DNA of 64,000 nucleotides, from IMG/VR virus record IMGVR_UViG_3300028840_008185, positions 186,001 through 250,000 of that record. The stretch is one strand, 5' to 3'. This document shows positions 2,071-22,380 of this stretch, piece after piece (the first letter of the stretch is position 1; each line of letters begins with the position of its first letter). Under the pieces are notes generated by a model that was given only the letters and a program-made list of their open reading frames with translations, did no database searches and was not told where the DNA came from. The position numbers were made by a program, and so were the translations under genes.

Positions 2071-2098
2071 TTTGCTTCTCCTTTGCTGTTGGTTGATA

Positions 2099-2524: not shown

Positions 2525-2525
2525 C

Positions 2526-2984: not shown

Positions 2985-2998
2985 GGCTCCTCCTCCTC

Positions 2999-3301: not shown

Positions 3302-3304
3302 TTG

Positions 3305-3463: not shown

Positions 3464-3466
3464 CTC

Positions 3467-3856: not shown

Positions 3857-3859
3857 CTT

Positions 3860-4102: not shown

Positions 4103-4106
4103 CGTC

Positions 4107-4307: not shown

Positions 4308-4352
4308 CGTCTTGTCTCCTCCGAAAGCTTCCAGTAGCGACATTTCAATCCC

Positions 4353-4772: not shown

Positions 4773-4882
4773 TGATCCTCAACCTTTCCCCGACAGGCTT
4801 TCTTGTCGGCTTCTTTCTTTTGGTCCGTATGTCTACCACTTCCGCCGTGCTGAAATGCTGCCACGGCGATATGGTTTCTCAC
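4769..4882 (-). CDS. small basic protein (MRNHIAVAAFQH..., 37 aa; not in ORF track)
   Basis: GTG start, open frame ends in an ATGA overlap with 4353..4772. Confidence 0.5.
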   Translation of the reverse strand: MRNHIAVAAFQHGGSGRHTDQKKEADKKACRGKVEDQ

Positions 4883-4883
4883 G

Positions 4884-5141
4884 TTAGGCTTTCTCTTTCT
4901 CCCACGGCGCTTTCGGCGGCGGTTCCTCTTCTTGGACATCTACCCATCGCTCCTCGTAGTGCTCAATGTCAAACCGCATGTCCCACATTTCAGCGCAACG
5001 CTGACACATCGTCTTGTCGTCACGGATGTAGGCATCGCAGAAAGTCTCAACTCCACAAACCATGCAGGGCTGAAGAGGCTTACGCTGCTTAGCTCGAATC
5101 TGCTCCCGACGCTTCTTGCGGTTGTGCTTGTCCCAAGGCAT
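4884..5141 (-). CDS. basic protein with CxxC zinc ribbon (CMVC...CQRC)
   Basis: Start at MPWD just after upstream stop. Confidence 0.7.
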   Translation of the reverse strand: MPWDKHNRKKRREQIRAKQRKPLQPCMVCGVETFCDAYIRDDKTMCQRCAEMWDMRFDIEHYEERWVDVQEEEPPPKAPWEKEKA

Positions 5142-5142
5142 A

Positions 5143-5304
5143 TTAGCGCAGCTTCTCGCCGTTGAGAGCACGGGCAGCCAGCCTCGCCCTGTCCATCACC
5201 ACGTCAGCCGTATACTCCACGTCGTGGTGATACTGGTCATACGCCGTGTAAGCACCGAACGTTGCCAGAGCCAATACAGTAACCACCAAAAACGTCTTGA
5301 ACAT
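5143..5304 (-). CDS. small membrane-anchored or secreted protein (MFKTFLVVTVLALA...)
   Basis: GAGGAG SD; N-terminal hydrophobic helix. Confidence 0.7.
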   Translation of the reverse strand: MFKTFLVVTVLALATFGAYTAYDQYHHDVEYTADVVMDRARLAARALNGEKLR

Positions 5305-5407
5305 GAGTCTCTCCTCTTGTTGTCTTGGCGCATTGCTCAAGCGCCTTTGGCGCAACCAGCTTGGTCCCAAGACCACCATGCTAGCTGGTTGCTGTGGTGC
5401 GGTGTTG

Positions 5408-5794
5408 CTAGAAACAACTTCGTAGTGCTCCAGTCCCGAAGCACATTGTCCCGTTCGTGTTTGTGTAGACGGTGGAGTTGCTGTCATAGGTCCAGTGGTT
5501 GTAGTCTTTGTCGGTGCCGTATGAAGTGCCATCGTCGTTGTAGGTGCCACTCCACATGCTTCCAGTGTTGAAGTTGTGACCCCTGACTTCGGTCCTGTCG
5601 CTGTACGTGTCCACGTCGTAGAAGTTGCCAGAGTTGTAGTCATACGACGTGCTGTAGAGCGGGGTCGTAGTGGTCGGCACGATGCTGTCACAGCCGATGC
5701 AGGTGGTGCTGAAGCCGTCAAGCCAGTCTGCCTGCACGTTGCCAGCACAGAACACCATTGCCACGAATGCCAGAATTGCCACGATTGCCTTCAT
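5408..5794 (-). CDS. secreted Ser/Thr/Tyr-rich protein
   Basis: Signal peptide MKAIVAILAFVAMVFCAGNVQA; AAGGAG SD. Confidence 0.8.
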   Translation of the reverse strand: MKAIVAILAFVAMVFCAGNVQADWLDGFSTTCIGCDSIVPTTTTPLYSTSYDYNSGNFYDVDTYSDRTEVRGHNFNTGSMWSGTYNDDGTSYGTDKDYNHWTYDSNSTVYTNTNGTMCFGTGALRSCF

Positions 5795-5830
5795 TTGTCT
5801 CTCTCCTTGTTGGTTGTTGACTCCGATATG

Positions 5831-6154
5831 TTACAGCCCCAAACAGGCTGCCGGTAGAATTCCGTTAACTATGTTGCTGCAACTATTATTACGAAGTGCG
5901 TCCAGACATGCATCCCACTCTTCCACTGTAGGCTGGTTTGTCACCATCTGCCCACACTTCCCAGCGTCCATGCAGCAACCACCCATGAACACATTTACGC
6001 ACTCGTCGAAGTTGACAGATGAGTTACACTCCATCACCCGCTGACAAGTTGCCATGCCACTCTCGTAACAGACATCTTGGGCTGTCTCCGGTAGCTCACC
6101 GCCACCACACGCCGAGACTGCGAACACCAGAAGAATTGCTACGATTGCCTTCAT
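5831..6154 (-). CDS. Cys-rich lipoprotein
   Basis: MKAIVAILLVFAVSA-C lipobox; multiple further Cys. Confidence 0.8.
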   Translation of the reverse strand: MKAIVAILLVFAVSACGGGELPETAQDVCYESGMATCQRVMECNSSVNFDECVNVFMGGCCMDAGKCGQMVTNQPTVEEWDACLDALRNNSCSNIVNGILPAACLGL

Positions 6155-6178
6155 CTATCTTCTCCCTGTTTGGGTTGT

Positions 6179-6502
6179 TTAGAACATCCTGATTTCACGG
6201 TTGCCAGACTCATCCACCTCATACACCTTCCAGAAGCCACTTGGGAACACCTCGTAAATTGCGTCGAGAATCTGCTCCCTTGAAGCGTCTACATCCACCT
6301 CAGCCACCTTGTCATCGGGACCGCACATCACTGGACCCAAGTAGACGTTGAAGAACCGCTTGCCAGTCTTAGCCCGAGATGCCGCCATCACATCGTCAGC
6401 CACCACACAACCCTTGGAGTAGGTCACACAACCGGGCTTCACCCAATGACCGTCACCATCCTGCGTGTAACCCTTGGCAATCAACTGGCTTCTCAACGTC
6501 AT
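6179..6502 (-). CDS. hypothetical protein (107 aa)
   Basis: GGAGG SD. Confidence 0.75.
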   Translation of the reverse strand: MTLRSQLIAKGYTQDGDGHWVKPGCVTYSKGCVVADDVMAASRAKTGKRFFNVYLGPVMCGPDDKVAEVDVDASREQILDAIYEVFPSGFWKVYEVDESGNREIRMF

Positions 6503-6505
6503 GGC

Positions 6506-6859
6506 TTACCTCCTCCAATCGGGGTTGATCTCATCACGCAGAGCGTGCCAGTCACCATCCAGCTCCACCAACCGCTCGCACTGTTCTTCCGTGAGCCAGT
6601 TGATGCTGCACTCCCAGGTCACGTCTCCACCCTTGTGGTAGGTGGTGCGAGTCACGAACCGACCGTCGAAGCCCCAGCACACCGTGGTCCGGTTGCCCCA
6701 CACATGGATACGCACCGACTTGTCCATTTCACCAGTGATCCTGCGAACGTCGTTGTTCCAGTAATACTCGACAACCTGGAAGCCCTGCTCTGGTGTGGGC
6801 ATACTGTCGAGAGCCGACTTGAGCGCGTCGATGACTGTGTTGATGGCGTCGTTATCCAT
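6506..6859 (-). CDS. hypothetical protein (117 aa)
   Basis: ORF with SD. Confidence 0.75.
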   Translation of the reverse strand: MDNDAINTVIDALKSALDSMPTPEQGFQVVEYYWNNDVRRITGEMDKSVRIHVWGNRTTVCWGFDGRFVTRTTYHKGGDVTWECSINWLTEEQCERLVELDGDWHALRDEINPDWRR

Positions 6860-6934
6860 GGCACGTAGCTCCGTTTTTGATACGGTGTTTGGTGGAATTT
6901 TTGCTGGTACTTAAGTCAGGATTTGGGTTTCTGG

Positions 6935-7135
6935 CTAGACCTTCTGAAGTCTAGTTCGCCGCAACTTCTTGGGTCGCTTGAACGTCACAATGTAGCAATC
7001 CTCATCGCGGTCCATCTCCACCACTTCCCACCCCTTTGAGCCATAACCATTGAGCCAGTTACGTAGCTTGTGGGTGTCGAGAATGATACGAGACTTGAAC
7101 ATGAACCGCTCTACAGTGTATTCCCACTTGGTCAT
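6935..7135 (-). CDS. DUF4177-like small protein
   Basis: KWEY...LNGYGSKGWEVV...FKR pattern typical of DUF4177. Confidence 0.7.
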   Translation of the reverse strand: MTKWEYTVERFMFKSRIILDTHKLRNWLNGYGSKGWEVVEMDRDEDCYIVTFKRPKKLRRTRLQKV

Positions 7136-7170
7136 TTAGCTCTCCGGTGACACGGTGTTTTGGCAAAAAC

Positions 7171-7316
7171 TGGTCTGGGGTCTGAGCACCCCTGGTCGGC
7201 GCTATTTCCCCAATGATTCCCCAGGTTTCCAGCGCCCCTCCTCGGTTGGGAAACCATAACTACTTGAAACAACAGACCATTCAGGTGGCGCCCAAGTCCA
7301 GGGGACACGGCGCCCA
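7171..7316 (-). ncRNA. candidate structured RNA with H-type pseudoknot
   Basis: Outer stem TGGTCTG/CAGACCA; crossing stems GGTTTCC/GGAAACC and GGCGCT/AGCGCC; extra hairpins; followed by GTTTTT. Confidence 0.5.
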
Positions 7317-7320
7317 TCCC

Positions 7321-7515
7321 TCAGTCCCAAGAGTTGTAGTAAGCGTTGTCCTCACCGTCAGACTCACGCTCCACAACGGGCGGGGAGGAGTGAGTGTTGT
7401 AGAAGTAGTAGTAGCAGAAGTAGTTGTGACACTCCCACATACCACCGATGCTGCACTCCATCCAGACCAGCGGAGTGTCGCACTCACCACAGACCTTGAC
7501 CATCTTCTTGCTCAT
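7321..7515 (-). CDS. small zinc-ribbon protein (MSKKMVKVCGEC...), Tyr-rich C-terminal half
   Basis: AAGGAGGAG SD directly after the mini-tRNA CCA; CGEC, CSIG, CHNYFC. Confidence 0.7.
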   Translation of the reverse strand: MSKKMVKVCGECDTPLVWMECSIGGMWECHNYFCYYYFYNTHSSPPVVERESDGEDNAYYNSWD

Positions 7516-7525
7516 CACTCCTCCT

Positions 7526-7577
7526 TGGTGAACCTTTGTGGACTCGAACCACATACTTCCAAATACAAGTAAGGTTC
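7526..7577 (-). ncRNA. 52-nt minimal tRNA-like RNA lacking an anticodon arm
   Basis: Perfect 7-bp acceptor GAACCTT/AAGGTTC plus A-CCA; hairpin ACTT-GTATTTGG-AAGT; canonical T arm TGTGG-TTCGAGT-CCACA. Confidence 0.8.
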
Positions 7578-7789
7578 ATTACTTAGCCGCCGCTGACTCA
7601 ACCGAAACACGAGGGGTAGATGCCGTTCATGTTGTCTCTCTTGGTGAGGTGGTGGTTGTCAGTCGCGGACCTTTAGGGTGCATTTCAAAGCCCCACTGAC
7701 TCTCCGGGCACCCATCTCCCAGAGCATCTTCTTCTCTCTCCGGTTGCTCCATGTTTACTTCATCTGCTTTTTCCTCCAGTACTGACTCA

Positions 7790-7809
7790 AGGGGCCCCTA
7801 GGGGCCCCT
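7790..7809. repeat. 20-bp perfect palindrome, (AGGGGCCCCT)x2
   Basis: Read directly; lies just past the stop of 7818..8027. Confidence 0.9.
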
Positions 7810-7817
7810 CTTGCTAC

Positions 7818-8027
7818 TTACTTCATCTTCTCCTTGACTTGAGCCAACATCGAGTCCATGGCCAGCGTGTAGACGGCTAACTTCTCGCACATCGCATCCA
7901 CTTCGCTCTTTTGCTCCGATTGCTCTTGCTCTTGGTGCATCAGCCTCCACAACCGCCGCTCACTTGCGTCTCGAACATGATGGTAGCGTGGGGCTGACCT
8001 TCCGCCTCGTGGTCTACACATGGCCAT
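7818..8027 (-). CDS. hypothetical coiled-coil protein (MAMCRPRGG...)
   Basis: GGAGGT SD; start overlaps upstream stop. Confidence 0.65.
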   Translation of the reverse strand: MAMCRPRGGRSAPRYHHVRDASERRLWRLMHQEQEQSEQKSEVDAMCEKLAVYTLAMDSMLAQVKEKMK

Positions 8028-8430: not shown

Positions 8431-8703
8431 CTACTCACTCTCCTTCCCCACCCTCAACCAACCCAGCTCATAAGCTCTCTTGGTGAGGTGGACTAGAAGC
8501 CTGGTGTCTCCCTTGGTCGATGCCATGAACTGAGCACGGAGCAAGAGGTGGTAGAAGAACACCAAGTCTTGTGGATACTTACCAGACCTGGTGACCCTTC
8601 TTCTCTGAAGTCCACGCCTCCTACGCCACACTGCATTGCTCAGTGCGTCTCCTACTTCCCACATGAAGGTGGGGTCTTGCACAGACACAGAGAAGGGATA
8701 CAT
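8431..8703 (-). CDS. basic hypothetical protein (MYPFSVSVQ...)
   Basis: AAGGAG SD before ATG 8703; upstream extension in the track is non-coding-like. Confidence 0.7.
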   Translation of the reverse strand: MYPFSVSVQDPTFMWEVGDALSNAVWRRRRGLQRRRVTRSGKYPQDLVFFYHLLLRAQFMASTKGDTRLLVHLTKRAYELGWLRVGKESE

Positions 8704-9748: not shown

Positions 9749-12442
9749 TTATAGATTATCCTCGTAGTAATGTAGCTCTCCTATCTCCTCTTCCGTATGA
9801 GGCTCTTTGGTTATATTCTCGTTGATTGTTTCGATTAAGATTCTTATAGCCGGGGCTAGGGATTTCAGTTCATTTAGGTCATATGTCTCAATATCTATCT
9901 GAGTCTGCGGGAAGCCCGCATATATGTCTTGCTTGGCGTATCGCTTTAGAGGTGCTGGGGTTTCTATAGGCTTTTGACAAATAATAAATACCTCCTTCTC
10001 GCGCCCTCTTGATTGGGCTCCGAAGGTCGCCTTGATTCCGATGTTCGCACTTACATCGGAATTCCTGTAGTTTGTGATGTCCCAGCCTTGGAACATCTCT
10101 TTGGGAAACAGTTCAGTTAAATCTGGATCATAGGGCTTCCCTATTGGGACGACGTTTGATGTATCTCCACCCCTTTGGTCCGTTAAATTCATACTCTCCG
10201 CAAAGCCTCCTATCGTAGTAATAATAGGAGCTATTTTCTCGACATCTTTGGGAAAATCGAAATGAAGCGTATAAGTATTCCTATCTATATCCACCTTGAG
10301 ACCTAGGTTAAAATCTCCTATCTGCGATGGCCATGAAAGATGTCCTGCGGGTAATCGGTCTTTTGTCGCATCTATAGAGAAGTATCCATTATTGAAATTA
10401 TTTTGCTTCGGGAAAGAGACCCAAGCCATGAAGTATGCTCCATATAATTCTCCCTCGCGCCCAGTTTTCTCCTGCTCTCTTCCCTCCATAGAGGTCCAAC
10501 CACCGAAAACTGTTATAGACAGTTCGGGAAAGAACTTTTCCAATATCTCTTTTGGCTGGCCATATAGCTTTGCCCGCTTAGATATAGAGAATGTTTGGCT
10601 TTCAAGCTTAATCGCTTGAGCTTTGGCCCCGATGTTCTTTATGACCTGAATAGGCTCCGTGAAGTTTCCACCCACGGGTATGTTATACTGTGATGTTTCA
10701 TCCTGGTTGAATAACTCAAAGAATATGTTGTATGAGACTGGCTTACCTTCGTGGTGGATGAGCATAATTTTAAGATAAATATTTAGTTTTTTACTTCCCG
10801 CTCGTATAACAGTATCTTCATACTTCAGAGTATCCCAACCCTTAAAGATTTCTGGTGGAAACACCTCTTTCATTTCTGGAGGCGCTGGGTCTTTGTCTCC
10901 CTCTTCCTTCTTTAGAGTGAACTCAGCAATCAAATCATGAATCTGTGGGAGTTGTTCTTCGAATTCACCTTTGCTCAGGTTTTCCACCTCAGCGCCGCGA
11001 TATTCATTTGTAAATCCCCAGCGCACTTCTACACCCTCTTTGCCGCTTGGATGAACTTCTTCTGGCCATCCCATAGCCCAGGAGATTTTATCTTGTTCTT
11101 TATCTACACGCAGAAAAACTTCTCCCTGGTGAAACCTCAGATAGGCTTCTATCTCATTGGGTTCATACTTAGTAACAAACCATTGCGGCTTATCACCTCG
11201 CATGGTGCCAAAAACATGGGCTGGGAAGTATTTTCTTAGGTCTACCTCCTGAGCCCGCTTAGATATAGGTAATGATTGATTTCCTATCAACTCTAGCTCT
11301 TCTTCTGGGTATTGCTGCTTTGCTTCTTCGGCAAGATCATTTCCGCTGTCGATTGCCTGTTTGATAGGCTCAATTAGTTTGTCGAACTCTCCCATAGTTT
11401 TTGCTATAACCATTTCGTTGAACACTGGGTCCATCTTCGGCATGTTTAGTTGGATGTGAACCCCGCCGTATGTTAGGCGAATATCCACTGAGTAGTAAGG
11501 TTCAGTTGGATTAGGCGTGAGCGGTGGTAAGTGAGCCTTTATAATGTCTACGTCATAGTTTTCTATTATGAAATTCTTGAATAAGTTCTTTGGGAATAGC
11601 TCCGTGAAGTTTATGTTTTGGACCGCTCCAGTAGGTCTTGGCTTCTGGTATTCTGTTATGCCCCTTTGCTTTAGACTCTTCAGTGTTTCTGCATCTACTC
11701 CAACACTTTCAATAATTTCAAGAATTTTGGGCAGCTTCTCCTTTATCTCCTCGTTTTCCAGCCATATTTTTAGAGGCTTTCCTATCAAGCCGGTATTGAA
11801 GTCTCCTAGCTCTGGATCCCATTTTAAATCCAGTGTCATTTGTTTTCTTCCGCCTTTAAAATGATGTAGTTCTAATCTTATCCTTGGCTCCCACTTTATT
11901 CCTGGAATATGCACGTAGGCTTCAAAGGCGTCTGTCTCCCACGAAGAGCCTCCGCCATATTTTAAAGCTTGAATGTTCCAACCGCCGAAATATCCTGGCG
12001 GAATGAAAGGGAAGTGTTTTCTTAATACCTCCGCTGCTTCGTGTCTCTCTTCCTCTTTCCAGCTTGATCTCTTGGAAATCCTAGGCGTTATTTCTTTAAT
12101 AGTTTCCTGATCTTTCTCGGGAAGCTTCTTGAAGAGCCTGTCTTTAATCACGAAATCTATGTTCTTTTTCGCATCGACAACTTTACCTTTATAATCATAA
12201 TCTTTCTCTAATTGAGACGCAGTTGGATCAAATATGTTTCCCTTCTTATCCTCCGCCCAGAAGTGTGCGGTGTCTTCCTTGTGCTTGCCTTTGCCTTTGT
12301 GTGGCGGCTTGCCTTTCATAAGTTTAAGTTCAGGGAACAGCAGAGACATGGCGGCAGCATAGAAGAAACAATTCCCATGATGCTTCGCCCTCACATTTTC
12401 CTTCATCCATTTCAGGATAGGCTGCCGCTTAGATAGTTTCAT
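9749..12442 (-). CDS. 897-aa modular (poly)protein: N-terminal Cys-His-Asp (transglutaminase/papain-like) domain plus three repeated two-domain cassettes separated by ISKR[AS]
   Basis: GNCF...HFW...DPTASQ; motifs at aa 3, 122, 393, 620; six FP..F.GW-type repeats. Confidence 0.85.
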   Translation of the reverse strand: MKLSKRQPILKWMKENVRAKHHGNCFFYAAAMSLLFPELKLMKGKPPHKGKGKHKEDTAHFWAEDKKGNIFDPTASQLEKDYDYKGKVVDAKKNIDFVIKDRLFKKLPEKDQETIKEITPRISKRSSWKEEERHEAAEVLRKHFPFIPPGYFGGWNIQALKYGGGSSWETDAFEAYVHIPGIKWEPRIRLELHHFKGGRKQMTLDLKWDPELGDFNTGLIGKPLKIWLENEEIKEKLPKILEIIESVGVDAETLKSLKQRGITEYQKPRPTGAVQNINFTELFPKNLFKNFIIENYDVDIIKAHLPPLTPNPTEPYYSVDIRLTYGGVHIQLNMPKMDPVFNEMVIAKTMGEFDKLIEPIKQAIDSGNDLAEEAKQQYPEEELELIGNQSLPISKRAQEVDLRKYFPAHVFGTMRGDKPQWFVTKYEPNEIEAYLRFHQGEVFLRVDKEQDKISWAMGWPEEVHPSGKEGVEVRWGFTNEYRGAEVENLSKGEFEEQLPQIHDLIAEFTLKKEEGDKDPAPPEMKEVFPPEIFKGWDTLKYEDTVIRAGSKKLNIYLKIMLIHHEGKPVSYNIFFELFNQDETSQYNIPVGGNFTEPIQVIKNIGAKAQAIKLESQTFSISKRAKLYGQPKEILEKFFPELSITVFGGWTSMEGREQEKTGREGELYGAYFMAWVSFPKQNNFNNGYFSIDATKDRLPAGHLSWPSQIGDFNLGLKVDIDRNTYTLHFDFPKDVEKIAPIITTIGGFAESMNLTDQRGGDTSNVVPIGKPYDPDLTELFPKEMFQGWDITNYRNSDVSANIGIKATFGAQSRGREKEVFIICQKPIETPAPLKRYAKQDIYAGFPQTQIDIETYDLNELKSLAPAIRILIETINENITKEPHTEEEIGELHYYEDNL

Positions 12443-12732
12443 TCCAGTTCCTCGCTTTTATCTTCCAGCTTGGCAAGTTTTGTTTCAATGTATCGCATAA
12501 CATTCTCTATGCGGGTTCTCGCCAGCACTGAAAAATCGTCATCTCCTGATAACTCTTCAAGAATATCACCAAGTTCGTAGGACACAAGCTTTTTCAGTTC
12601 TGTTAAAAGCCCTCTACGTTCCGCAATTCTTTGATACTTAGAGGAACGGTGAAGAAGATCATATCTTTCTTCGCTCTCCTGTAATTTTTGCAGCAAATCT
12701 TCTTCTTCTGCGGCACGCTTAGATAGTTTCAT
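12439..12732 (-). CDS. small helical protein starting MKLSKRAA
   Basis: ATGA overlaps on both sides; shared N-terminal motif. Confidence 0.85.
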   Translation of the reverse strand: MKLSKRAAEEEDLLQKLQESEERYDLLHRSSKYQRIAERRGLLTELKKLVSYELGDILEELSGDDDFSVLARTRIENVMRYIETKLAKLEDKSEELE

Positions 12733-14741
12733 CTCGCAACCTCTGTTAAAAACTTATTCACTGCATCTCTATATCTCTTCTCCCAGACGCCCATTGGTTT
12801 GGCCTTGAGTTCATTATAGCGACCAACGGCATCTTTCCGCTCAAGATCTGTCTTCTCATATTCCCAGATCAAACGCCGCTTATCTTCTTCTTCACTTGCT
12901 TTTTCTATTTCTTTACGCCTTAAATCCTGAGCATAATCCAGAGCCCCTATGTATTTAAGCAGTTGATTTATTTCTTCAAGCTCTTCGTCCATCTTGGCTC
13001 TCAGGCTCACAAAGAAATGATTTGGCCAAACCCTTGTGGACAATCCCACCTCGGGCATATCTGGCGCTTGTATGAAATATGGTTTGTTCTGCCCGCCGCT
13101 AACGTAATAGGGTGGAGCAGCCATAAAAGCTTTGAGAGCTTCATTTCTTGGGCGCTCATTTCCCCAACGTTCAGGAAACTTTTGATGAAATCTTCTTTTC
13201 CATGCATCAGCAACAGTCCCTATGTTAGAATGATACTCTATATCTCTTAGAGCATGCGGCAATCTGGTCTTCTCCAGTTGCTTCCACTTTTCCTCCACCA
13301 ATGTCTTTCTTTCTTCGGAGGTTGGAGCCCGTCTTATTACCTCATCCCATTGCTTTATATCTTCTGTTTTATAGCCATGAGGTCCATAGCCAGGAGTTTC
13401 TGTTGTTGGGAGCCCTGCTGGTCTGCTCCAGCGATCCTCTTCCGCCCAGTCTTTTTTCGGAAGCTTTCTCGGCAGCTTTTTGCCCCAGCTAATCAAGGTT
13501 TGGACTAGGTGGCGCATCTCGTGCTCGGTAGTTGATTTAAGCTTCTTCCTAAACTTCTCGTATTCATTTGGATCTTTTGGATGTAAAAACTTCTTGGGCA
13601 CAAAAATTCTAAGATTTCGTAGATGGTCATCCCACTCGCCTAGTGGATCTTCTGCTCTCTGTGGTTCCATGCTCACTATAATCTTTACAGGGACTAAGAC
13701 CTGAGGAAGATTGTATTTTTCCCAGCCAGCATAGTCTATAGGTATTGTTGTGTTTTCATAACCCACAAAGACATTTCCCTTCTCATACTTTTCCTCTGGC
13801 GTAGGCTTCTTTTCATATCCTTCATCATCATACCTAAGATCATCTAGCTTAGCGTTTTGAAGAGATTTGCGTCTCATTATTAGATAATCTGGAAGGTCTT
13901 CATCCCACAGAGGCTCTCCCTTCTCGAAAAATTTAGAGGTCTTGTCGGACAACATGTGCAACGCATCTTTGAGCGTCATTTTTGTTTCAAACTTAGGATA
14001 ATCCGCAAAGCCCCAAACCTTTTGAAAAGCTTTACTTTCTGCGTTGGGAATGTATACGTCTTCTATTGGGCCACTGACTTTGGAGACGCCTCTTGGAAGG
14101 GTCACATACAACGTTTTGTATTCATCTACCGCCCCAAGCAGTTCGGGATTCATTATAGGAATTTTGAAATCTTTAAACAATCCGCTGGTCAAGAAAAGCT
14201 CAACCTCTTCTTTAAGAGTCTTTGCGTTATAAATCTTTGGCAACAAATCGTCTATTTTATCTTGAATTTCATCGACTTGGTTCTCAACAGCCTTATATTG
14301 TTTCTGCGTTATTCTTGGTTTCATAATGTCGATGAGTGCCCAACGAGCGTAGTTCTTTTCAACCCACGCCCAAACCTTTTCGGTTTCAGGCGGCAGAGGT
14401 ATAACTGCCGCTTCCTTCTTCATTTTACCTCTGTGCGACAGGTCAATCAACGGCTTAATGTGAATTACCTGGACCTTATCTTTCGGGTCTAATTTCACGA
14501 AATCTTTCATTTTAGCCACTTGTTTGGGCACATGCTTATGTAAATCCTTGAACTTTGTGGTTATTATGGTATTAACCCTAACCTTAAAGCCCCAGTCTTT
14601 TCCTGAATAAGACTGAGCATCATACTCTCTTCCCTTTCTATACTTGCCCATCTCCTTTCCAATACGCACAGTTAGATTCTTCTTGCCCGAAAGCAATTTG
14701 TTCTTATACTGTGATGGGAAGGGCATTACATTCTTTTTCAT
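12729..14741 (-). CDS. 670-aa protein: N-terminal ASCH/PUA-like domain plus HExxH zincin-like region
   Basis: FPSQYKNKLLSGKKNLTVR (ASCH-like); HEMRH at 13509-13523 and a downstream RDIEYH. Confidence 0.75.
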   Translation of the reverse strand: MKKNVMPFPSQYKNKLLSGKKNLTVRIGKEMGKYRKGREYDAQSYSGKDWGFKVRVNTIITTKFKDLHKHVPKQVAKMKDFVKLDPKDKVQVIHIKPLIDLSHRGKMKKEAAVIPLPPETEKVWAWVEKNYARWALIDIMKPRITQKQYKAVENQVDEIQDKIDDLLPKIYNAKTLKEEVELFLTSGLFKDFKIPIMNPELLGAVDEYKTLYVTLPRGVSKVSGPIEDVYIPNAESKAFQKVWGFADYPKFETKMTLKDALHMLSDKTSKFFEKGEPLWDEDLPDYLIMRRKSLQNAKLDDLRYDDEGYEKKPTPEEKYEKGNVFVGYENTTIPIDYAGWEKYNLPQVLVPVKIIVSMEPQRAEDPLGEWDDHLRNLRIFVPKKFLHPKDPNEYEKFRKKLKSTTEHEMRHLVQTLISWGKKLPRKLPKKDWAEEDRWSRPAGLPTTETPGYGPHGYKTEDIKQWDEVIRRAPTSEERKTLVEEKWKQLEKTRLPHALRDIEYHSNIGTVADAWKRRFHQKFPERWGNERPRNEALKAFMAAPPYYVSGGQNKPYFIQAPDMPEVGLSTRVWPNHFFVSLRAKMDEELEEINQLLKYIGALDYAQDLRRKEIEKASEEEDKRRLIWEYEKTDLERKDAVGRYNELKAKPMGVWEKRYRDAVNKFLTEVAR

Positions 14742-14742
14742 A

Positions 14743-15180
14743 TCATTCCTCTGAGTAAGCTAGAACATTCACGGGGAGGTTACTAACATATTCCAACCAC
14801 TTATAGATTTTGCTCAGTAGCATTGGAAAATACTTCATACTCATCCTTGGAAGATCTACAACGTAGTATCTGTCTTTCTTGCCAGCAGGTTTGGCCATTT
14901 TTCCAAAATATACATCTCCAAGCTCGCTTGGCCATACCATCTTTAGTCTGAATGATTTCCCATCTCCTTCTAGCTCAAGAGTAGCAGATAGATATTCATC
15001 CTCTTTCGCGCCCGCAACTGGCCAGAAGGTTGTCTCCAGTGTTATGAATTCACGCTCGGCAGGCTTTCCCTCAGTGGGACCAAACCATTTGAATGGGAAG
15101 TTCTTTATCTTATCCGGAGTGAAATATCTGAATATGCTCCCCTTATCAGCCTCTTCGTGCTTCTTCCTGAATTCGCTCAT
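14743..15180 (-). CDS. hypothetical protein with WPSxLGD domain paralogous to polyprotein segments
   Basis: LKMVWPSELGDVYFG. Confidence 0.8.
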   Translation of the reverse strand: MSEFRKKHEEADKGSIFRYFTPDKIKNFPFKWFGPTEGKPAEREFITLETTFWPVAGAKEDEYLSATLELEGDGKSFRLKMVWPSELGDVYFGKMAKPAGKKDRYYVVDLPRMSMKYFPMLLSKIYKWLEYVSNLPVNVLAYSEE

Positions 15181-18100
15181 CTCGCGTCTCTCTTCTCGAA
15201 CTCATGCAAATCTATTAGTTGCTTTTCAGTCAAGCCTCTTTTCTGTTGCTCTTCGTAATCTTGGGGATACTCAAGAGGGAAAACCTCAGCTTCCTCTCCC
15301 TTTTCTTCCGGCGGCGTCACCTTCTCTGTTGGAAACTCAATCACCTTGGCGGCTCGTCTGGAAAGCTGAAACCCATCACTTATCTCTTCCAAATATTCTC
15401 CCGGCAGCGTGCCACTTTTAATTGTCACAAACGCATGAGGGGTGCCCTGAAATAGAAGGCGGGGGCTCGTGCGTTTGAATCCCTTGGCTTTACTAAGCTC
15501 TTCGAGAAGGGAGCCTTGCTCTACTTCGCGCTGGCTCCGTGGCTTTTCCTCTACAATACTAACACCTTCAATCAGTCCATCCGCTAGAGCACGGCTGTAA
15601 TCAACTGCATACAGCTTTCTGCGCTTTGCGAATGCTTGTTGTTCAGGATCATCTTGTGGTCCTATTGGCCGTAACAATAACGAAACCACACGAGAACCAC
15701 CAGGGCCTCGTAGCTTTTCAAGAGCTTCAATAATTTCTTCTGTAGTTAGAGATTCGGCTTCTTTTCCAAGCTCTTCTGCCGCCCTTCCACGATATTTTTC
15801 TAATACTTCAGGCATATGAGACAAACTAGCGGGAGTCTTCAAGCCCTCTTTTATTAGATCTACTCCTGAGGGTCCGTAGTGATATAGCATAGTGGGCACA
15901 GCGGCTCGTTTAGATATAGCAAAAGAACCCTCGGACTTCATCTTTTTTGATAGGGCGCCTATCTTGCTAATAACTGGCAACAATTTCCTCAAGACACCAT
16001 CAAGCTCGCTATAAGATCCTTCTTTAGCGAATATCATTGTGGGCCCGTCTTCTATGGCATCAAGCTCCATATCCCCAAGTTTAGATGGCCAGTGCAACTC
16101 TAAGCGGTAATCGCCTTCTCTTATGGGTGCGTCCGGTTCCAATACCTTGGAGCGCAGCTTTATGGTGAGTAAGAACCAGCCGTATGCGACCTTGGGCATA
16201 AATTCTTCCTCATAGTGCGTTGGAATATCTGGGAAGCTGGTGCTTAACTCAAGCGTGTATCGAGGGTAACCAGTCTCGGAGTAATCATCAGCCTGAACAT
16301 CCCAACCCTCTATTTTGCTTGGTGGAATTAGCAGCCTGAACTCTCTTTCGTAGACATCATCCTCACCCGCCCTTTTTGATAAAGGGATGCCACCTCCTCC
16401 TCCAGCAAACTTCTCCATCACCATTCTCTTAGCCACATCTTTCGTAAGCTCTTTGCCTTCCTCAGCCAACCCATCCTGAAGCTCAAGCAGATACTTTCCA
16501 ACCTGACCGATGATTGGCCCAGGTTTTACATCAAGGATTTCCATAATTTCTTTGCCGTTAAGTATGGGTTTCCTGGCCACGGGAATCTCTTTGGTCTGCT
16601 CGATGCGCTTTCTTAGTTCTGGGATGTAGTTGCTGGGAGGCATGTTCCCTAGAGCATCGGCCTCCGCAAGATCCAGCACATCATCAACCATGCCTTCGCC
16701 CACGTCGCGCACGAACTTCCTAAGAGCTTTTGGCGAGGCTTTTTCAAGGGAGTGTGGGCGCATGTGGTTCTCGACCATGGATTTCACGCGCTGTATAGTT
16801 TTTCCGTCAAACTTGAGTCTGCGCAAGATGGCCTCAGCAATTTCTGCGCCCGCTTTCTCATGGCCCAAGAACTGAATCTTGTCGCCTATGAACTCTTGGG
16901 TCTCAGGTTTGCCGATGTCGTGGAGTAGGGCAGCCAGCTGCCCGTGAATCGTAGGTGGGGCGTTCGAGAGGACTAATAGAGTGTGCTTATAGACATCTCC
17001 TTCCTGGTGGCTGCGCTTGTCGTGCTTGACACCAATGAGCCCATAGATTTCGGGAAGGACTAAGGGAAGGAGGTTGGTCGCTTTCATTATTTTAATGGCC
17101 TGGGCGGTTTTGCCAAGCTTCATTACTTTTGTGAGTTCTTCTTGTATGCGTTCCCAAGAGATTTTCTGTATCTCTTCGGCGTTTCTCCTGACTGATCTGA
17201 GCATAAACATAGGAATCTTCCAGTCATATTTACATTGGAAGCGAATAAGACGAAGCATGCGCAGTGGGTCATTAGAGAACATCGTGTCGGGATTCACAGC
17301 CGGGTGGCCTCTTAGAATGCCCTTTTCTATATCCTCTTTGCTTGTGCCCGTCAGGTCTTCTATTTCGCCCGATGTGAGGTCTCTGAGCAGCATGTTCACC
17401 GTGAAGTCTCTACGCTCGATGTCATCCTTGAGAGGCGCGTAAACCGTCTCACGCTGCCTTGAGGAGGGATCGGGGTAGTGTTCCTTCTGCGTGTCCGCAA
17501 TATCGATTTCAGCGCCTGTCGTAGCATATCGCTGGCCCTCATAAGTTATATCATCCTTGAAGGCGACGTGCCAGATTGGGTAGGCTGCTCCTAGCTGGCG
17601 AGGGGTTGAGGTCTGCTCGGGGAAACTGTCAGCTATAAACTTGCAGAGGGCTTCAGCCCCGCCACGCATTTCCACAACTATGTCGAGGTCTTTGGACTCC
17701 ATGCCCATCAGCTTGTCTCGCTCGTAGCCTCCTACGGAGAAGGCTTTACCGGCGAAAGGGGTGCCCGGTAGTATCCGGAGTAGAAGTCTTTGAACCTCCT
17801 CCTCCGCGAGCGCAGCTCGCTTTGACAGTTTGACATCACTGGCTGGCTGATCTGCTTTCGCACCGGCTCGTTGCTCCGCCCACCTTATTAGACCATCCAT
17901 GGATCTGGCTGCACTTTCAGCACTCATACCTATAACTGTGCCAGCCTCCTCGGGAACTTTGTATAGAAAGTCTTCTTCTGGATAGTTTCTACCCATACCG
18001 GCGAAGGCTCTATTATCCAAATCCATGGGGTCGCCGGATGGTCTTTCATTTTTTTCGTAGATCGCATATGGCGGCGGCTCAAATCCAGGCTCACTAACTT

Positions 18101-19691
18101 CACTAATTATCATAACTGCCTGCGCAAAATACTCACGCTCATCAATATACACCTGCTGCATATTGGCGTTAAGGAAGTTTATCAACTCAGCTTTTACAGC
18201 CGAATTTTTTATTTGTGGCCAGATGTTTGTAAGTCGGTCACTCACCAATTGGAACAACACAGAATCAGGATCGCCATCAGCAAAATCTTCCGTCAGGCCA
18301 ACTGCCGCATCATCCGCATGGTCAAGCTCTCTGAACCGCCCCAGCCCATGACCGAAAGCAGCCAGCAAATACCATACGGGGGCCTCTTCTTCTACTGGTT
18401 CAGGAGACTCCTCTTTTGGCACCTCAGGAGCCACCGGCTCCTCTGGCGGCGCTTCTCTCTTCTTATGCATCTCCCACATCTCTTCTTCTGGAATAGGCTT
18501 AAGCGGCGTGCCAGCGCCGGGAGGAAGCTTATAGCTCTTCCACTGACCTGGCTGCTGTGTTTCGTAAGGTTCAAACCACTTAATGGCTCGCTTCGAGATA
18601 GGAAAAGATTGAGAGGCAACCTTACCCTTCGTGGTGTAGGATGTTTCCAATCCGGGAACAAGGTATTGATTCTTGAGAGTTCCAGCTTCGTGGCCTACGA
18701 TCTTAGCTGTGTTCTCCAGAGCTTCTTTGAACTCTTCTTTGAGTTTCTTTTCCTTTTCTTTTTGCTCCTTTGGAAGACTTCCCTTTCTCACCTTCTTAAG
18801 CTCTTTGCGCATCTCTTCATTGGCATGAAAACCCCTAATATCTTTGGCGGTGATATCAAATGGCTTCAAATAGGCATTAACAGTATTGTCCGTAATGTAA
18901 TAATTATCTCCCTTGAAGATCGTATCATTATCTTTCTTGCCACTCACCATTTCCCTGAGAACGGGAATGATGCTTTTGTTAGTGATCTTCTTATCTTGTT
19001 CTACGCCAGATTTTCCGGTGTATTTAATCACGGCTGTTCCACCAGTAAATTTTATATGTTTCTTCAGCCAGGTGGTCACGCCGTAATGCTTCATATCCTC
19101 GGCAGAATATCTGTTCCCAACTCTCTCGTATGTATCGTCAATGAGAGCTACAGCCAGAGCGTTATATTTTGTCTTGATGTCGCTAGACTTGAGATCCTTG
19201 CCCACTTCCTTTCTAACTTTGGTAATATTTTTGGACAGCTTGTCCAACTTCTTGGCCTTCTTTTCGTCGCGCTCCTTGACATGCTTTTCGGTGTAAATAT
19301 ATGTAATGTTTCCACTTTCTTCTTTCTTTTTCTCGACGTATTCTGCGGCTCGTTTAGACAAAGGAATCCTCTGCGGAATGCCGCTAAGCTCTTGGAATTC
19401 TTCATAATCTACAAGGATTTCTGTATTGGCGGGAATGTCTCGACTAGCGGCTAAGGCATAGCCTTTCTTGGTGGAAATGGCCAAGGCATTGGGGTCTTTG
19501 GAATGATTGAGGTATTTTCCTATGTCCGTTCTGGAATAGGCAGAATCAGTATCTTTGGCCCCTTTCAACTTCTTCATGATGAGGCCAACTACATCACCCT
19601 TCTTAATTTTTTCTTTAGAAAACACGCCTTTGCCGTGAATCTGTGATTTCTTGATTTCTACGGGAAGATCACGCACCGATATTGCTGCCAT
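15177..19691 (-). CDS. 1504-aa multi-enzyme polyprotein (SET, topoisomerase IB, unknown, CCA-adding/HD, unknown, ART-like, tail)
   Basis: Uninterrupted ORF; six [IL]S[KR]RA motifs at the domain boundaries. Confidence 0.92.
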   Translation of the reverse strand: MAAISVRDLPVEIKKSQIHGKGVFSKEKIKKGDVVGLIMKKLKGAKDTDSAYSRTDIGKYLNHSKDPNALAISTKKGYALAASRDIPANTEILVDYEEFQELSGIPQRIPLSKRAAEYVEKKKEESGNITYIYTEKHVKERDEKKAKKLDKLSKNITKVRKEVGKDLKSSDIKTKYNALAVALIDDTYERVGNRYSAEDMKHYGVTTWLKKHIKFTGGTAVIKYTGKSGVEQDKKITNKSIIPVLREMVSGKKDNDTIFKGDNYYITDNTVNAYLKPFDITAKDIRGFHANEEMRKELKKVRKGSLPKEQKEKEKKLKEEFKEALENTAKIVGHEAGTLKNQYLVPGLETSYTTKGKVASQSFPISKRAIKWFEPYETQQPGQWKSYKLPPGAGTPLKPIPEEEMWEMHKKREAPPEEPVAPEVPKEESPEPVEEEAPVWYLLAAFGHGLGRFRELDHADDAAVGLTEDFADGDPDSVLFQLVSDRLTNIWPQIKNSAVKAELINFLNANMQQVYIDEREYFAQAVMIISEVSEPGFEPPPYAIYEKNERPSGDPMDLDNRAFAGMGRNYPEEDFLYKVPEEAGTVIGMSAESAARSMDGLIRWAEQRAGAKADQPASDVKLSKRAALAEEEVQRLLLRILPGTPFAGKAFSVGGYERDKLMGMESKDLDIVVEMRGGAEALCKFIADSFPEQTSTPRQLGAAYPIWHVAFKDDITYEGQRYATTGAEIDIADTQKEHYPDPSSRQRETVYAPLKDDIERRDFTVNMLLRDLTSGEIEDLTGTSKEDIEKGILRGHPAVNPDTMFSNDPLRMLRLIRFQCKYDWKIPMFMLRSVRRNAEEIQKISWERIQEELTKVMKLGKTAQAIKIMKATNLLPLVLPEIYGLIGVKHDKRSHQEGDVYKHTLLVLSNAPPTIHGQLAALLHDIGKPETQEFIGDKIQFLGHEKAGAEIAEAILRRLKFDGKTIQRVKSMVENHMRPHSLEKASPKALRKFVRDVGEGMVDDVLDLAEADALGNMPPSNYIPELRKRIEQTKEIPVARKPILNGKEIMEILDVKPGPIIGQVGKYLLELQDGLAEEGKELTKDVAKRMVMEKFAGGGGGIPLSKRAGEDDVYEREFRLLIPPSKIEGWDVQADDYSETGYPRYTLELSTSFPDIPTHYEEEFMPKVAYGWFLLTIKLRSKVLEPDAPIREGDYRLELHWPSKLGDMELDAIEDGPTMIFAKEGSYSELDGVLRKLLPVISKIGALSKKMKSEGSFAISKRAAVPTMLYHYGPSGVDLIKEGLKTPASLSHMPEVLEKYRGRAAEELGKEAESLTTEEIIEALEKLRGPGGSRVVSLLLRPIGPQDDPEQQAFAKRRKLYAVDYSRALADGLIEGVSIVEEKPRSQREVEQGSLLEELSKAKGFKRTSPRLLFQGTPHAFVTIKSGTLPGEYLEEISDGFQLSRRAAKVIEFPTEKVTPPEEKGEEAEVFPLEYPQDYEEQQKRGLTEKQLIDLHEFEKRDAR
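15366..15902 (-). other. probable ADP-ribosyltransferase-fold (Tpt1/KptA-like) domain (segment 6)
   Basis: LYHYGPSG...IKEGLKTP at the start and GTLPGEYLEEI at the end resemble YHGT...GL.P and IP.EYI patterns. Confidence 0.45.
16383..17813 (-). other. cca: class II tRNA nucleotidyltransferase (CCA-adding/poly(A) polymerase family) with HD domain (segment 4)
   Basis: VGGYERD...KDLDIVV, RRDFTVN, DPLRMLRLIRF, SWERIQEEL, LLHDIGKP. Confidence 0.92.
18600..19346 (-). other. DNA topoisomerase IB catalytic domain (segment 2)
   Basis: RVGN, GKSG, KDIRG, VGH, KNQYL catalytic residues as in bacterial/viral TopIB. Confidence 0.9.
19362..19691 (-). other. SET domain (polyprotein segment 1)
   Basis: SQIHGKGVF...YLNHSKDPN...RDIPANTEILVDY: GxG, NHS and ExxxDY SET motifs. 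Confidence 0.9.
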
Positions 19692-21972: not shown

Positions 21973-22380
21973 TCAACCCCTTTTGACTATTCTCCAAATT
22001 ATTTCCACATCAGCCAATCTCAACATTTCTCGTTTATTTATCAGGCCATGTTTAGGATCCAAGAACTGCCTCCTTTTGCTATCCCAAACAACGTAGTGCC
22101 CAGAAAGATTGGGCTGCCTCCACTGGACAGCTACGAGTGCAGCGCCCTTCTGCGGGAGCCTGCATATCTCGTTGTAGTCGTAACCGAGAGAATCCAAAAT
22201 GTCTAGAACTCTGTGGGGATACAATCCACCACGAGAGCGTTTAAGCTCAGGAAATTGTTCAGTAACTTCCTCGTAGAGATGCTTGGTAAGCATGGCTATG
22301 CAAGCTATACCGCAGTCCGTCTTCCGTCTTTGCTCTACAAATTCAATTTGCCTTGGCCTGTGAGACGGAATTTTACTCAA
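21973..22380 (-). CDS. stand-alone C39-like cysteine peptidase
   Basis: EQRRKTDCGIAC...GHYVVWD...LDP. Confidence 0.85.
   Translation of the reverse strand: MSKIPSHRPRQIEFVEQRRKTDCGIACIAMLTKHLYEEVTEQFPELKRSRGGLYPHRVLDILDSLGYDYNEICRLPQKGAALVAVQWRQPNLSGHYVVWDSKRRQFLDPKHGLINKREMLRLADVEIIWRIVKRG

What the first reader, a model, noticed from the sequence alone, without database searches (positions are those of the whole stretch)
9749..14741. The SKRA motif also starts proteins (MKLSKR...) and is confined to one gene cluster: a targeting tag?
Seen: two ORFs begin MKLSKRQ (12442) and MKLSKRAA (12732) with an identical 17-nt start (ATGAAACTATCTAAGCG). The 897-aa ORF has internal ISKRS (12065-12079), ISKRA (11252-11266) and ISKRA (10571-10585). 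The 670-aa ORF has a degenerate LSHRG (14427-14441) right after its ASCH domain. That gives 11 clear copies plus 1 degenerate in 9.7-19.7 kb; I saw no exact [IL]S[KR]R[AS] copy elsewhere. A motif at residue 3 is not needed to separate domains. Inference: it acts as a per-domain capsid-loading or export signal, analogous to the T4 internal-protein capsid targeting sequence, and is then clipped.
Basis: partly seen in the sequence, partly recalled or inferred. Interest (0 to 1): 0.82.

Follow-up and report, generated by a model that had tools for sequence, protein, structure and literature searches.

The report
Cleavage-site motif in phage polyproteins
A short peptide motif (hydrophobic-x-[I/L]-S-K-R-A) marks every module boundary, and some protein starts, in a jumbo-phage gene cluster that strings many enzymes together; it is most likely the cutting site for a protease the phage itself encodes, not a separate loading tag for each domain.

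Summary
There are 11 in-frame copies of [IL]S[KR]R in 3,313 aa of five coupled minus-strand genes (9749-19691), against 0.18 expected, and none in 17,563 aa of other long minus-strand reading frames in the window. The codons vary, so selection is on the peptide. The 'degenerate LSHRG' is not a copy: the real site at that junction has been deleted here. Rare metagenomic relatives (GC 33-65%) keep the motif at module junctions. Three domain types (a new HExRH zincin-like domain, TopoIB, a YunG/transglutaminase-like domain) sit behind an internal junction in one genome and behind a 6-13-residue N-terminal leader ending in the motif in another. Modules are gained and lost exactly at the motif. Best reading: this is the processing site of a polyvalent-protein-like polyprotein, probably cut by the co-encoded zincin-like domain, which starts just after the site or a decayed form of it in most copies. 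The N-terminal copies are the same site behind a minimal leader. A T4-like capsid-targeting role is not excluded for those copies. It is not supported as a per-domain tag, because two of the five cluster proteins have no copy. No cleavage, packaging or protease activity has been shown. New variant of a known kind; interest moderate to high.

The parts
15177..19691 (-). p1504 polyprotein. Order of modules: SET (aa 20-96), site, topoisomerase IB (139-340), site, unknown 257 aa, site, CCA-adding enzyme with HD domain (651-1064), site, repeat domain of 155 aa, site, unknown 184 aa, site, acidic 58-aa tail.
   Evidence: Pfam hits for SET, Topoisom_I, PolyA_pol and HD. PHROG tRNA nucleotidyltransferase. 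All six motif copies fall between the Pfam domains.
19347..19361 (-). Junction site RIP-LSKRA between SET and TopoIB.
   Evidence: The same junction is present in L003.
18585..18599 (-). Junction site SFP-ISKRA between TopoIB and the unknown 257-aa module.
   Evidence: In L003 this site joins TopoIB directly to the CCA-adding enzyme, so the 257-aa module is missing there exactly from motif to motif.
17814..17828 (-). Junction site DVK-LSKRA between the unknown module and the CCA-adding enzyme.
16368..16382 (-). Junction site GIP-LSKRA between the CCA-adding enzyme and the repeat domain.
   Evidence: In L003 the protein stops two residues after this site (LLSKREQ*).
15903..15917 (-). Junction site SFA-ISKRA.
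15351..15365 (-). Junction site GFQ-LSRRA before the 58-aa tail.
   Evidence: The JGI contig L004 has a 1-nt deletion inside these codons, but three other assemblies do not.
14743..15180 (-). p145: one free-standing copy of the repeat domain, with no motif.
   Evidence: No family hit.
12729..14741 (-). p670: ASCH domain (aa 1-104) fused to a new zincin-like HExRH...E domain (core about aa 315-565, nt 13047-13799; HEMRH at nt 13509-13523). The junction motif has been deleted in this genome.
   Evidence: ASCH rests on structural neighbours and many phmmer hits. H-E-x-x-H, Q, G-x-P and a downstream E are invariant in 13 divergent sequences. AF2 places a beta-sheet before the HExxH helix. Foldseek top hits are zincins but none is significant. 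Loss of the motif is shown.
12439..12732 (-). p97: begins MKLSKR|AA (site at 12712-12726), followed by an acidic 91-aa module rich in charged residues.
   Evidence: The relative L003 has no p97, so this looks like an inserted cassette flanked by the 17-nt repeat.
9749..12442 (-). p897. Order: MKLSKR|Q leader (site 12422-12436), YunG/transglutaminase-like module (aa 7-125), ISKRS (12065-12079), repeat-domain pair, ISKRA (11252-11266), repeat-domain pair, ISKRA (10571-10585), repeat-domain pair.
21973..22380 (-). Free-standing C39-family cysteine peptidase, a conserved upstream neighbour and the alternative candidate protease.
   Evidence: Pfam PF03412 at 28.9 bits against a cut-off of 22. A homologue with 46% identity lies upstream of the cluster in L006. 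One is also called in L077.

Best explanation
The motif, in full hydrophobic(often F)-x-[I/L/F]-S-[K/R]-R-[A/S], is the processing site of a phage polyprotein system.

Five translationally coupled genes (19691 to 9749, minus strand) encode about 3,300 aa of modules strung together. The modules are a SET methyltransferase, topoisomerase IB, a CCA-adding enzyme, ASCH, a YunG/transglutaminase-like domain, eight copies of an unknown domain of about 140 aa, and several unknown pieces.

A protease encoded with them cuts at each site and frees the modules. The most likely protease is the new zincin-like HExRH...E domain of p670. The scissile bond is probably R|A. That is an inference from dibasic-plus-small-residue sites of other viral and secretory proteases. 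A cut before the I/L, as many zincins prefer, is not excluded.

The copies at residue 3 of p97 and p897 are the same site behind the shortest possible leader. They appear when a module that is internal in one genome becomes a gene of its own in another. They are probably kept so that the free-standing protein is trimmed to the same mature N-terminus. The identical 17 nt at the two starts are the footprint of a recent cassette insertion (p97), not a separate signal.

Shown: the motif, its position at junctions and at N-termini, its conservation, and its co-occurrence with the HExRH domain. Inferred: cleavage itself, the identity of the protease, the scissile bond, and where processing takes place (capsid or cytoplasm).
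For: (a) Enrichment and position. All nine internal copies lie between recognised domains or domain-sized segments of 58-482 aa.

(b) Peptide-level selection. Codons vary in the window. The motif persists in relatives with GC from 0.33 to about 0.65.

(c) The same boundary is an internal junction in one genome and an N-terminal leader in another, for three domain types.
- HExRH domain: internal QLSKRA|ALIPPPPE in L003, but MKSLNFPISKRA|IIQLPPE, MKPFNISKRA|LIQLPPE and MTSSPLSRRA|GLMKIPE at protein starts.
- TopoIB: internal in the window, L003, L005 and L006, but MESFYISKRA| in L077 and MSVIKSKFYLSKRE| in P0006.
- YunG-like domain: MKLSKRQ in the window, but an internal degenerate LQIKRAA in L005.

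(d) Modules come and go exactly at the motif. Examples are the 257-aa module (window against L003), a 580-aa module (L006 against L077), and p97.

(e) A candidate protease travels with the motif. An HExxH...E domain is present in every relative found. Most copies start directly after the motif or a decayed form of it; the tandem first copy in P0064 and the copies in motif-less L011 are exceptions. It occurs once or twice per polyprotein, as viral proteases flanked by their own sites do. The AF2 topology and the theme of the top Foldseek hits (selecase, IrrE/PprI, Wss1/SprT, lethal factor, a polyvalent-protein-associated domain) fit a zincin.

(f) The architecture matches the published 'polyvalent proteins', which were predicted to be processed by zincin-like peptidases (PMC5512222).

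(g) The leaders are minimal. All N-terminal copies counted lie within the first 13 residues, and P6 is hydrophobic in 10 of the 11 window copies, with Met taking that place in MKLSKR.
Against: - No experiment or proteomic data shows any cleavage.
- The HExRH domain has no significant sequence or fold match to any peptidase, and the models are of moderate confidence (pLDDT 70).
- Removing 6-13 N-terminal residues has no obvious benefit.
- Some lineages let the N-terminal copy decay (MKSLIKQA in P0047, MRRDAG in P0009). The window itself fused ASCH to the HExRH domain without a site. The site is therefore not always needed.
- A second conserved peptidase (C39) sits nearby.
- Only a handful of relatives exist, several of them close to one another.
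Confidence: 0.55

Rival explanations
1. One reading: the motif is a capsid-loading (or export) tag that is then clipped, like the T4 internal-protein capsid targeting sequence. Tagged proteins would be recruited into the prohead, cut there, and injected with the DNA.
For: N-terminal leaders that end in the site are conserved across lineages, even on small free-standing genes. Examples are MKIFPISKRAS, MRISKRS and MKSLSFYISKRA on three consecutive genes of L076 and L077. The layout matches T4 (a short MK... leader ending in the head-protease site) and the N-terminal packaging signal of P1 DarB (PMC9024508). The cargo (RNA repair, a topoisomerase, a methyltransferase, a ParB-like domain and a 2H domain in relatives) resembles the injected polyvalent proteins (PMC5512222). 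A polyprotein makes most sense if many enzymes have to be delivered as one unit.
Against: p145 and p670 have no copy at all. Internal copies cannot each be a loading tag. C-terminal copies exist (LSKREQ*, LSKRA*). The leader holds no information beyond the site. The candidate protease is a zincin, not an assemblin- or ClpP-type head protease. The large tail-like proteins at 30-49 kb lack the motif. No head genes could be examined.
Confidence: 0.2
2. The motif is a cleavage site, but the protease is not the HExRH domain. It would be the conserved neighbouring C39-family cysteine peptidase, the YunG/transglutaminase-like module, the phage's head protease, or a host enzyme.
For: The C39 peptidase is conserved upstream of the cluster in the three lineages where that region is available. 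C39 enzymes are known for removing N-terminal leaders. The YunG-like module shows a Cys...His...Asp pattern and has transglutaminase-core structural neighbours.
Against: C39 enzymes cut after Gly-Gly, which is absent here. The YunG-like module is missing from the 21 kb of the L006 lineage that was examined. A host enzyme is unlikely given conservation across phages with GC from 0.33 to 0.65. Only the HExRH domain is present in every relative.
Confidence: 0.17
3. The motif is not cut. It would be a docking or modification motif in linkers (for example, binding one common partner), or the peptide shadow of a DNA joint used to shuffle cassettes.
For: Module gain and loss happens at the motif. The two starts share 17 identical nt. 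The Ser codon is always TCN (29 of 29 copies), and the last Arg is CGN in 9 of 11 window copies against a baseline of 41-46%.
Against: The other codon positions vary freely, and the motif survives a GC shift from 0.33 to 0.65, so there is too little DNA identity for recombination. A docking motif would not need to sit at every junction and immediately before the conserved first residues of domains.
Confidence: 0.08

Closest known systems
Polyvalent proteins of phages and conjugative elements (Iyer, Burroughs, Anand, de Souza, Aravind 2017, PMC5512222)
   Same: Very large phage proteins that combine 2-15 unrelated enzymatic domains. They carry one to five zincin-like HExxH...E peptidase domains predicted to release the other domains. 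Pol-beta nucleotidyltransferase, 2H phosphoesterase and ParB-like modules are among the partners.
   Different: No Pfam polyvalent-protein or MPTase model matches here. SET, the CCA-adding enzyme and ASCH are not mentioned in that paper, and topoisomerase occurs once. My term searches of the paper found no sequence-defined junction site ('linker' 0 occurrences, 'cleavage' 3). Here the modules are also spread over five coupled genes.
T4 capsid targeting sequence of internal proteins IPI-III and the (L/I)xE sites of head protease gp21; S/A/G-x-E sites of the phiKZ and SPN3US head proteases
   Same: A short N-terminal MK... leader that ends in the same protease site used at internal positions of other proteins. 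The cargo includes paralogous families of injected proteins.
   Different: The site chemistry differs (dibasic plus Ala instead of Glu). The candidate protease is a zincin, not an assemblin-fold serine protease. There is no evidence of a head location, and not all cluster proteins are tagged.
Polyprotein processing in other viruses: flavivirus NS2B-NS3 ((K/R)R then G/S/A), ASFV pp220/pp62 (GG-X, cysteine protease pS273R), kexin/furin-type L-x-K-R sites (from general knowledge)
   Same: A short conserved site at every module boundary, a basic pair followed by a small residue, and a protease encoded next to or inside its substrate.
   Different: These are unrelated proteases in eukaryotic viruses. 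This is an analogy of mechanism only; no homology was tested or claimed.
Peptidase C39 double-glycine leader processing
   Same: A C39-family peptidase gene is a conserved neighbour, and short N-terminal leaders are present.
   Different: The leaders here are 6-13 residues with K-R rather than 15-30 residues ending in G-G. There is no ABC exporter.

Membership tests
Polyvalent proteins (PMC5512222) | One polypeptide of a phage or plasmid that combines several functionally unrelated catalytic domains. | tested here: met
   SET, Topoisom_I, PolyA_pol and HD in one 1504-aa ORF. Relatives add LigT/2H, ASCH and a YunG-like domain.
Polyvalent proteins (PMC5512222) | A zincin-like MPTase domain: a beta-sheet, a helix with HExxH, and a following helix with the Glu ligand. 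| tested here: inconclusive
   HExxH and a downstream E are invariant in 13 sequences. The AF2 topology fits. Foldseek hits are zincins, but all have E of at least 0.02. No Pfam or PDB sequence hit.
Polyvalent proteins (PMC5512222) | Packaged in the virion and delivered with the DNA. | not testable with these tools
   No proteomic data and no cultured relative. tblastn against GenBank phages found nothing.
T4-type capsid targeting sequence | A short N-terminal leader that ends in the maturation-protease site. | tested here: met
   MKLSKR| in p97 and p897. About 17 N-terminal copies were seen in some 10 lineages, all within the first 13 residues.
T4-type capsid targeting sequence | The same site is cut by the prohead protease in capsid and scaffold proteins. 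| not tested
   No head genes or head protease lie in the 64-kb window, and the rest of the genome could not be fetched.
   p145 and p670 have no copy. p1504 has none at its N-terminus.
Viral polyprotein with a cognate protease | A conserved short site at each module boundary, and a protease bounded by its own site. | tested here: met
Viral polyprotein with a cognate protease | Demonstrated cleavage products. | not testable with these tools
   Only DNA assemblies are available.
Sec/Tat signal peptide | A basic n-region followed by a hydrophobic h-region (for Tat: S/T-R-R-x-F-L-K). | tested here: not met
   Acidic or polar sequence follows the motif, for example AAEEEDLLQ. Most copies have KR, not RR.
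C39 double-glycine leader | Gly-Gly at P2-P1 of the leader. | tested here: not met
   P2-P1 are K/R-R in all copies.

The most novel reading that the evidence does not exclude
The heptad is a two-in-one tag. A new family of zincin-like phage proteases would recognise it to load a multi-enzyme arsenal (SET methyltransferase, topoisomerase IB, tRNA-repair and other modules) into the head, and also to cut that arsenal into free enzymes for injection. A 6-residue leader (MKLSKR) would then be enough to address any protein to the virion. That would be a minimal, portable packaging-and-release signal in huge phages.
Probability: 0.2. Interest if true: 0.85.

Novelty: new variant of a known kind. Interest (0 to 1): 0.62.

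Why it matters
Phage 'polyvalent proteins' were predicted in 2017 to be cut into working pieces, but my term searches of that paper turned up no defined cleavage site. Here the site can be read directly from sequence. It is conserved across phages of very different base composition, and it travels with a candidate protease from an undescribed family. The prediction therefore becomes a simple bench test of one protease, one heptapeptide and defined products.

It also shows how such genes evolve: modules are inserted, lost, fused or split off as separate genes exactly at the site. If the N-terminal copies also direct packaging, a six-residue tag would be a very compact tool for loading proteins into phage heads.

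Tried and rejected
- DNA-level signal: rejected as the main explanation, because codons vary. A residual codon bias (TCN for Ser, CGN for the last Arg) is recorded.
- Close relatives in IMG/VR found only the source contig. GenBank phages gave no near match and no HExRH homologue.
- The best TopoIB hit, LR745208, is not a polyprotein and has no motif.
- Word-based protein searches found almost nothing. The exhaustive phmmer search gave the useful relatives.
- Profile scans of IMG/VR and the metagenome collection added few loci. The first alignment was too divergent to use.
- Foldseek with the 555-aa model was swamped by coiled coils. The core-only model gave zincin-themed but non-significant hits.
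- The MKLSKRA pattern gave 57 hits, about what I estimated for chance, and only one of them in the source contig.
- The two 1-nt deletions in the JGI contig L004, one of them inside the LSRRA codons, looked like a gene fission at the site. Three other assemblies agree with the window instead, so this was not used as evidence.
- Read-through or frameshift fusion of p670 to p97 and of p97 to p897: the frames are open for only 8 and 5 codons upstream, and I saw no good slippery site by eye, so this was not pursued.
- The repeat domain has no recognisable relatives.
Full report
WHAT IS THERE

The window is part of a jumbo-phage contig, IMGVR_UViG_3300028840_008185 (318 kb). A near-identical 452.6-kb JGI contig also exists. 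The long ORFs that match known families are all on the minus strand.

Between 19691 and 9749 lie five genes whose starts and stops overlap or abut (ATGA overlaps, or a 1-nt gap):
- p1504 (15177-19691)
- p145 (14743-15180)
- p670 (12729-14741)
- p97 (12439-12732)
- p897 (9749-12442)

Pfam finds SET, topoisomerase IB and a CCA-adding enzyme with an HD domain in p1504, and nothing in the other four. The N-terminus of p670 is an ASCH domain, supported by structural neighbours and by many phmmer hits. Residues 7-125 of p897 resemble the phage YunG-like / transglutaminase-core fold and show a Cys...His...Asp pattern; this is a lead only. An unknown domain of about 140 aa, with the hallmarks FP..F.GW and WPS.[LI]GD, occurs eight times: once in p1504, once as p145, and as three tandem pairs in p897.

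CHECK OF THE OBSERVATION

A six-frame scan finds [IL]S[KR]R[AS] ten times, all in frame in these genes. MKLSKRQ at the start of p897 brings the count to eleven. The only other exact hit in the 64 kb is on the + strand at 976-990; I did not check whether it lies in a gene.

Composition predicts 0.18 copies of [IL]S[KR]R in the 3,313 aa of the cluster. None of 2,000 shuffles gave more than 3. The 17,563 aa of the other minus-strand frames of at least 100 aa hold none. Long frames of 56 unrelated viral contigs hold 2 in 219,696 aa.

Both N-terminal copies follow a GAGG Shine-Dalgarno sequence at 7 nt, and they share 17 identical nucleotides from the ATG. The codons of the I/L, S, K and R positions differ among copies, so the conserved object is the peptide.

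One item fails. LSHRG in p670 is not a decayed copy. The relative L003 has DLSHK at the same place and a true QLSKRA about 12 residues further on. The window has deleted that segment.

RELATIVES

Relatives are rare and known only from metagenomes. The word-indexed searches and the IMG/VR scans found almost nothing. GenBank phages have no homologue of the C-terminal part of p670.

The exhaustive phmmer search with p670 and contig look-ups gave the loci below.

| Locus | GC or identity | Main features |
|---|---|---|
| L003 | 46-88% identity to the window | SET-site-TopoIB-site-CCA enzyme, ending LLSKREQ* |
| L005 | GC-rich | One 1737-aa polyprotein with junctions LPFSKRAS, PPFSKRAK, PLPLSKRAE, IRLSKRAA and MPLSRRAA |
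| L006 lineage | GC 0.35 | Polyprotein starts MKSFLISKRA and has internal SFYISKRA and DFLISKRA; the HExRH protein starts MKSLNFPISKRA; a small ORF starts MRISKKS |
| L077 | 76% identity to the L006 lineage | Gene starts MESFYISKRA, MRISKRS and MKSLVFPLSKRA |
| L076 | 45% identity to the L006 lineage | MKSLSFYISKRA, MKIFPISKRA, and a degenerate MKSLIKQA |
| L014 / P0006 | GC 0.33 | MSVIKSKFYLSKRE in front of TopoIB |
| L009 / P0011 | not determined | MTSSPLSRRAG |

Stand-alone proteins P0018, P0021 and P0038 add further N-terminal copies.

Three regularities follow.

1. The fuller motif is hydrophobic(often F)-x-[I/L/F]-S-[K/R]-R-[A/S]. In MKLSKR the initiator Met takes the hydrophobic place.
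2. For three domain types, the boundary in front of the domain is an internal junction in some genomes and a 6-13-residue N-terminal leader in others. The residues after the motif stay the same: A-[LI]-I-x-L-P-P-E for the HExRH domain, and ...EY[VI]EKKKEESGNITY for TopoIB.
3. Modules are present or absent exactly from motif to motif. Examples are the 257-aa module of p1504, a 580-aa module of L006, and p97. In L003 two proteins stop 1-2 residues after a motif (LLSKREQ*, QLSKRA*).

p97 has no counterpart in L003, where the p670 homologue is followed directly by the MKLSKRQ gene. The 17-nt identity of the two starts is therefore best read as the flanks of a recently inserted cassette. L003 uses different synonymous codons for the same leader.

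THE CANDIDATE PROTEASES

An HExxH motif (HEMRH in the window) lies in the C-terminal part of p670. In 13 sequences at 21-53% identity, H, E, H, a Q three residues later, G-x-P, and a downstream E in [IV]E[FY]H are invariant. That is the pattern of a glutamate-zincin.

AF2 models (pLDDT 70) place a small beta-sheet directly before the long helix that carries HEMRH, followed by further helices. Foldseek finds nothing significant. Even so, the top of both lists is dominated by minimal zincins and related metalloproteases: selecase, jannalysin, abylysin, PprI/IrrE, Wss1/SprT, lethal factor, and a 'large polyvalent protein associated domain'. Sequence libraries do not recognise the domain.

The domain is present in every relative, once or twice per polyprotein. 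Most copies begin right after the motif or a decayed form of it. The first of the two copies in P0064 carries only a weak IQKSS form, and the two HELRH proteins of L011 have no recognisable motif.

A free-standing C39-family cysteine peptidase (21973-22380; 28.9 bits against a cut-off of 22) is a conserved upstream neighbour in the window, L006 and L077. It is the main alternative.

INTERPRETATION

The simplest account is a polyprotein processing site. The architecture is that of the 'polyvalent proteins' described in 2017, which were predicted to be processed by zincin-like peptidases (PMC5512222). My term searches of that paper found no defined site. SET, the CCA-adding enzyme and ASCH do not occur in its text, and topoisomerase occurs once.

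The N-terminal copies are the same site behind a leader that contains nothing else. They are conserved on free-standing genes at 45-76% identity, which argues for function rather than a mere relic. They can also decay (P0047, P0009), and the window fused ASCH to the HExRH domain after losing the site. The site is therefore useful but not indispensable.

I favour R|A as the scissile bond by analogy with dibasic-plus-small sites (flavivirus NS3, kexin-type sites; general knowledge). Many zincins select the residue after the cut, so a cut before the I/L is possible.

The T4 capsid-targeting analogy is fair for the N-terminal copies. T4 and P1 both use short N-terminal signals, and T4 clips them at the head-protease site (PMC9024508).

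Several points argue against a per-domain tag:
- p145 and p670 have no copy.
- C-terminal copies exist.
- The tail-like proteins at 30-49 kb have none.
- The candidate protease is not of the head-protease kind.

Nothing available here says whether these proteins are in virions. The head genes are outside the window and could not be fetched. I therefore rate a capsid-targeting role as possible (about 0.2) but not supported as stated.

OTHER CHECKS

Two 1-nt deletions in the JGI contig, one of them inside the LSRRA codons, would split p1504 and p670. Three other assemblies, two of them at about 170-180x depth, agree with the window. The intact reading frames therefore stand.

The Ser of the motif is TCN in 29 of 29 copies. 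The last Arg is CGN in 9 of 11 window copies against a baseline of 41-46%, and this is not a general property of K-R pairs in the window. This fits common descent of the copies under strong constraint on Ser. The Arg bias is unexplained.

VERDICT

The finding is a new, sequence-defined variant of a known kind of system, with a candidate protease from an undescribed family, and it can be tested directly.

Noticed in passing
window minus-strand gene starts at 19964, 20317, 21227, 21971, 23331; also L006, L009, L005: A second N-terminal signature, M-[KR]-x-[FLIV]-N-[STA], starts five small and otherwise dissimilar genes just upstream of the polyprotein cluster. It also starts 2-4 small genes in each of three relatives, including a GC-rich one. 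The codons vary. By my estimate chance would give about 0.3 per 100 ORFs. The HExRH proteins of some relatives begin MKSLN-FPISKRA or MKPFN-ISKRA, which combines both signatures. Its function is unknown.
   Followed up: partly
window 13013 and 15355; L004 11728 and 9387: The 452.6-kb JGI contig differs from the window by two 1-nt deletions. One lies inside the LSRRA codons and would split p1504 into 1449 + 55 aa with a GTGA overlap. The other would split p670 into 577 + 87 aa. Three other assemblies match the window, so this is a rare variant or an assembly error.
   Followed up: yes
window 14380-14440 (p670 aa 100-120): The ASCH-to-HExRH junction has lost its motif through a 7-11-residue deletion relative to L003. 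In this genome the two domains are probably not separated.
   Followed up: yes
all motif copies in the window and in L003, L005, L006, L009, L014: Codon bias inside the motif. Ser is always TCN (29 of 29). The last Arg is mostly CGN, even in AT-rich genomes where AGA dominates. This is not a general feature of K-R pairs in the window.
   Followed up: partly
L006 about 8560-8590, L077 polyprotein aa 282-290, P0047 N-terminus: A recurrent variant, [LI]-I-K-Q-A (RIPLIIKQA between TopoIB and the 2H/LigT domain; MKSLIKQA at a protein start), occupies places where the canonical motif would be expected. It may be a weaker or lineage-specific site.
   Followed up: no
window 9749-12067, 14743-15180, 15906-16370: Eight copies of an unknown domain of about 140 aa (FP..F.GW ... 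WPS.[LI]GD in the first type of copy) have no match in Pfam, PHROGs, or the protein atlas. This is a large paralogous family of a kind reminiscent of jumbo-phage internal or ejection proteins.
   Followed up: partly
window 1-8000: This block has GC 0.54-0.56 against 0.42-0.46 for most of the window, and it is full of small ORFs. A similar set of small ORFs follows the cluster in L003.
   Followed up: no
P0007 (L006 lineage): One NCBI record names this phage protein as coming from a 'Patescibacteria group bacterium' MAG. Given the phage gene context, this is probably a phage contig binned into a bacterial genome.
   Followed up: no
L006 polyprotein C-terminus; L076 and L077 equivalents: The last module of the relatives' polyproteins ends with ...GGNTRLAF[AK][AR]..., which looks like a ParB/Srx-type motif. 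ParB-like domains are typical of published polyvalent proteins. This was judged by eye and not tested.
   Followed up: no
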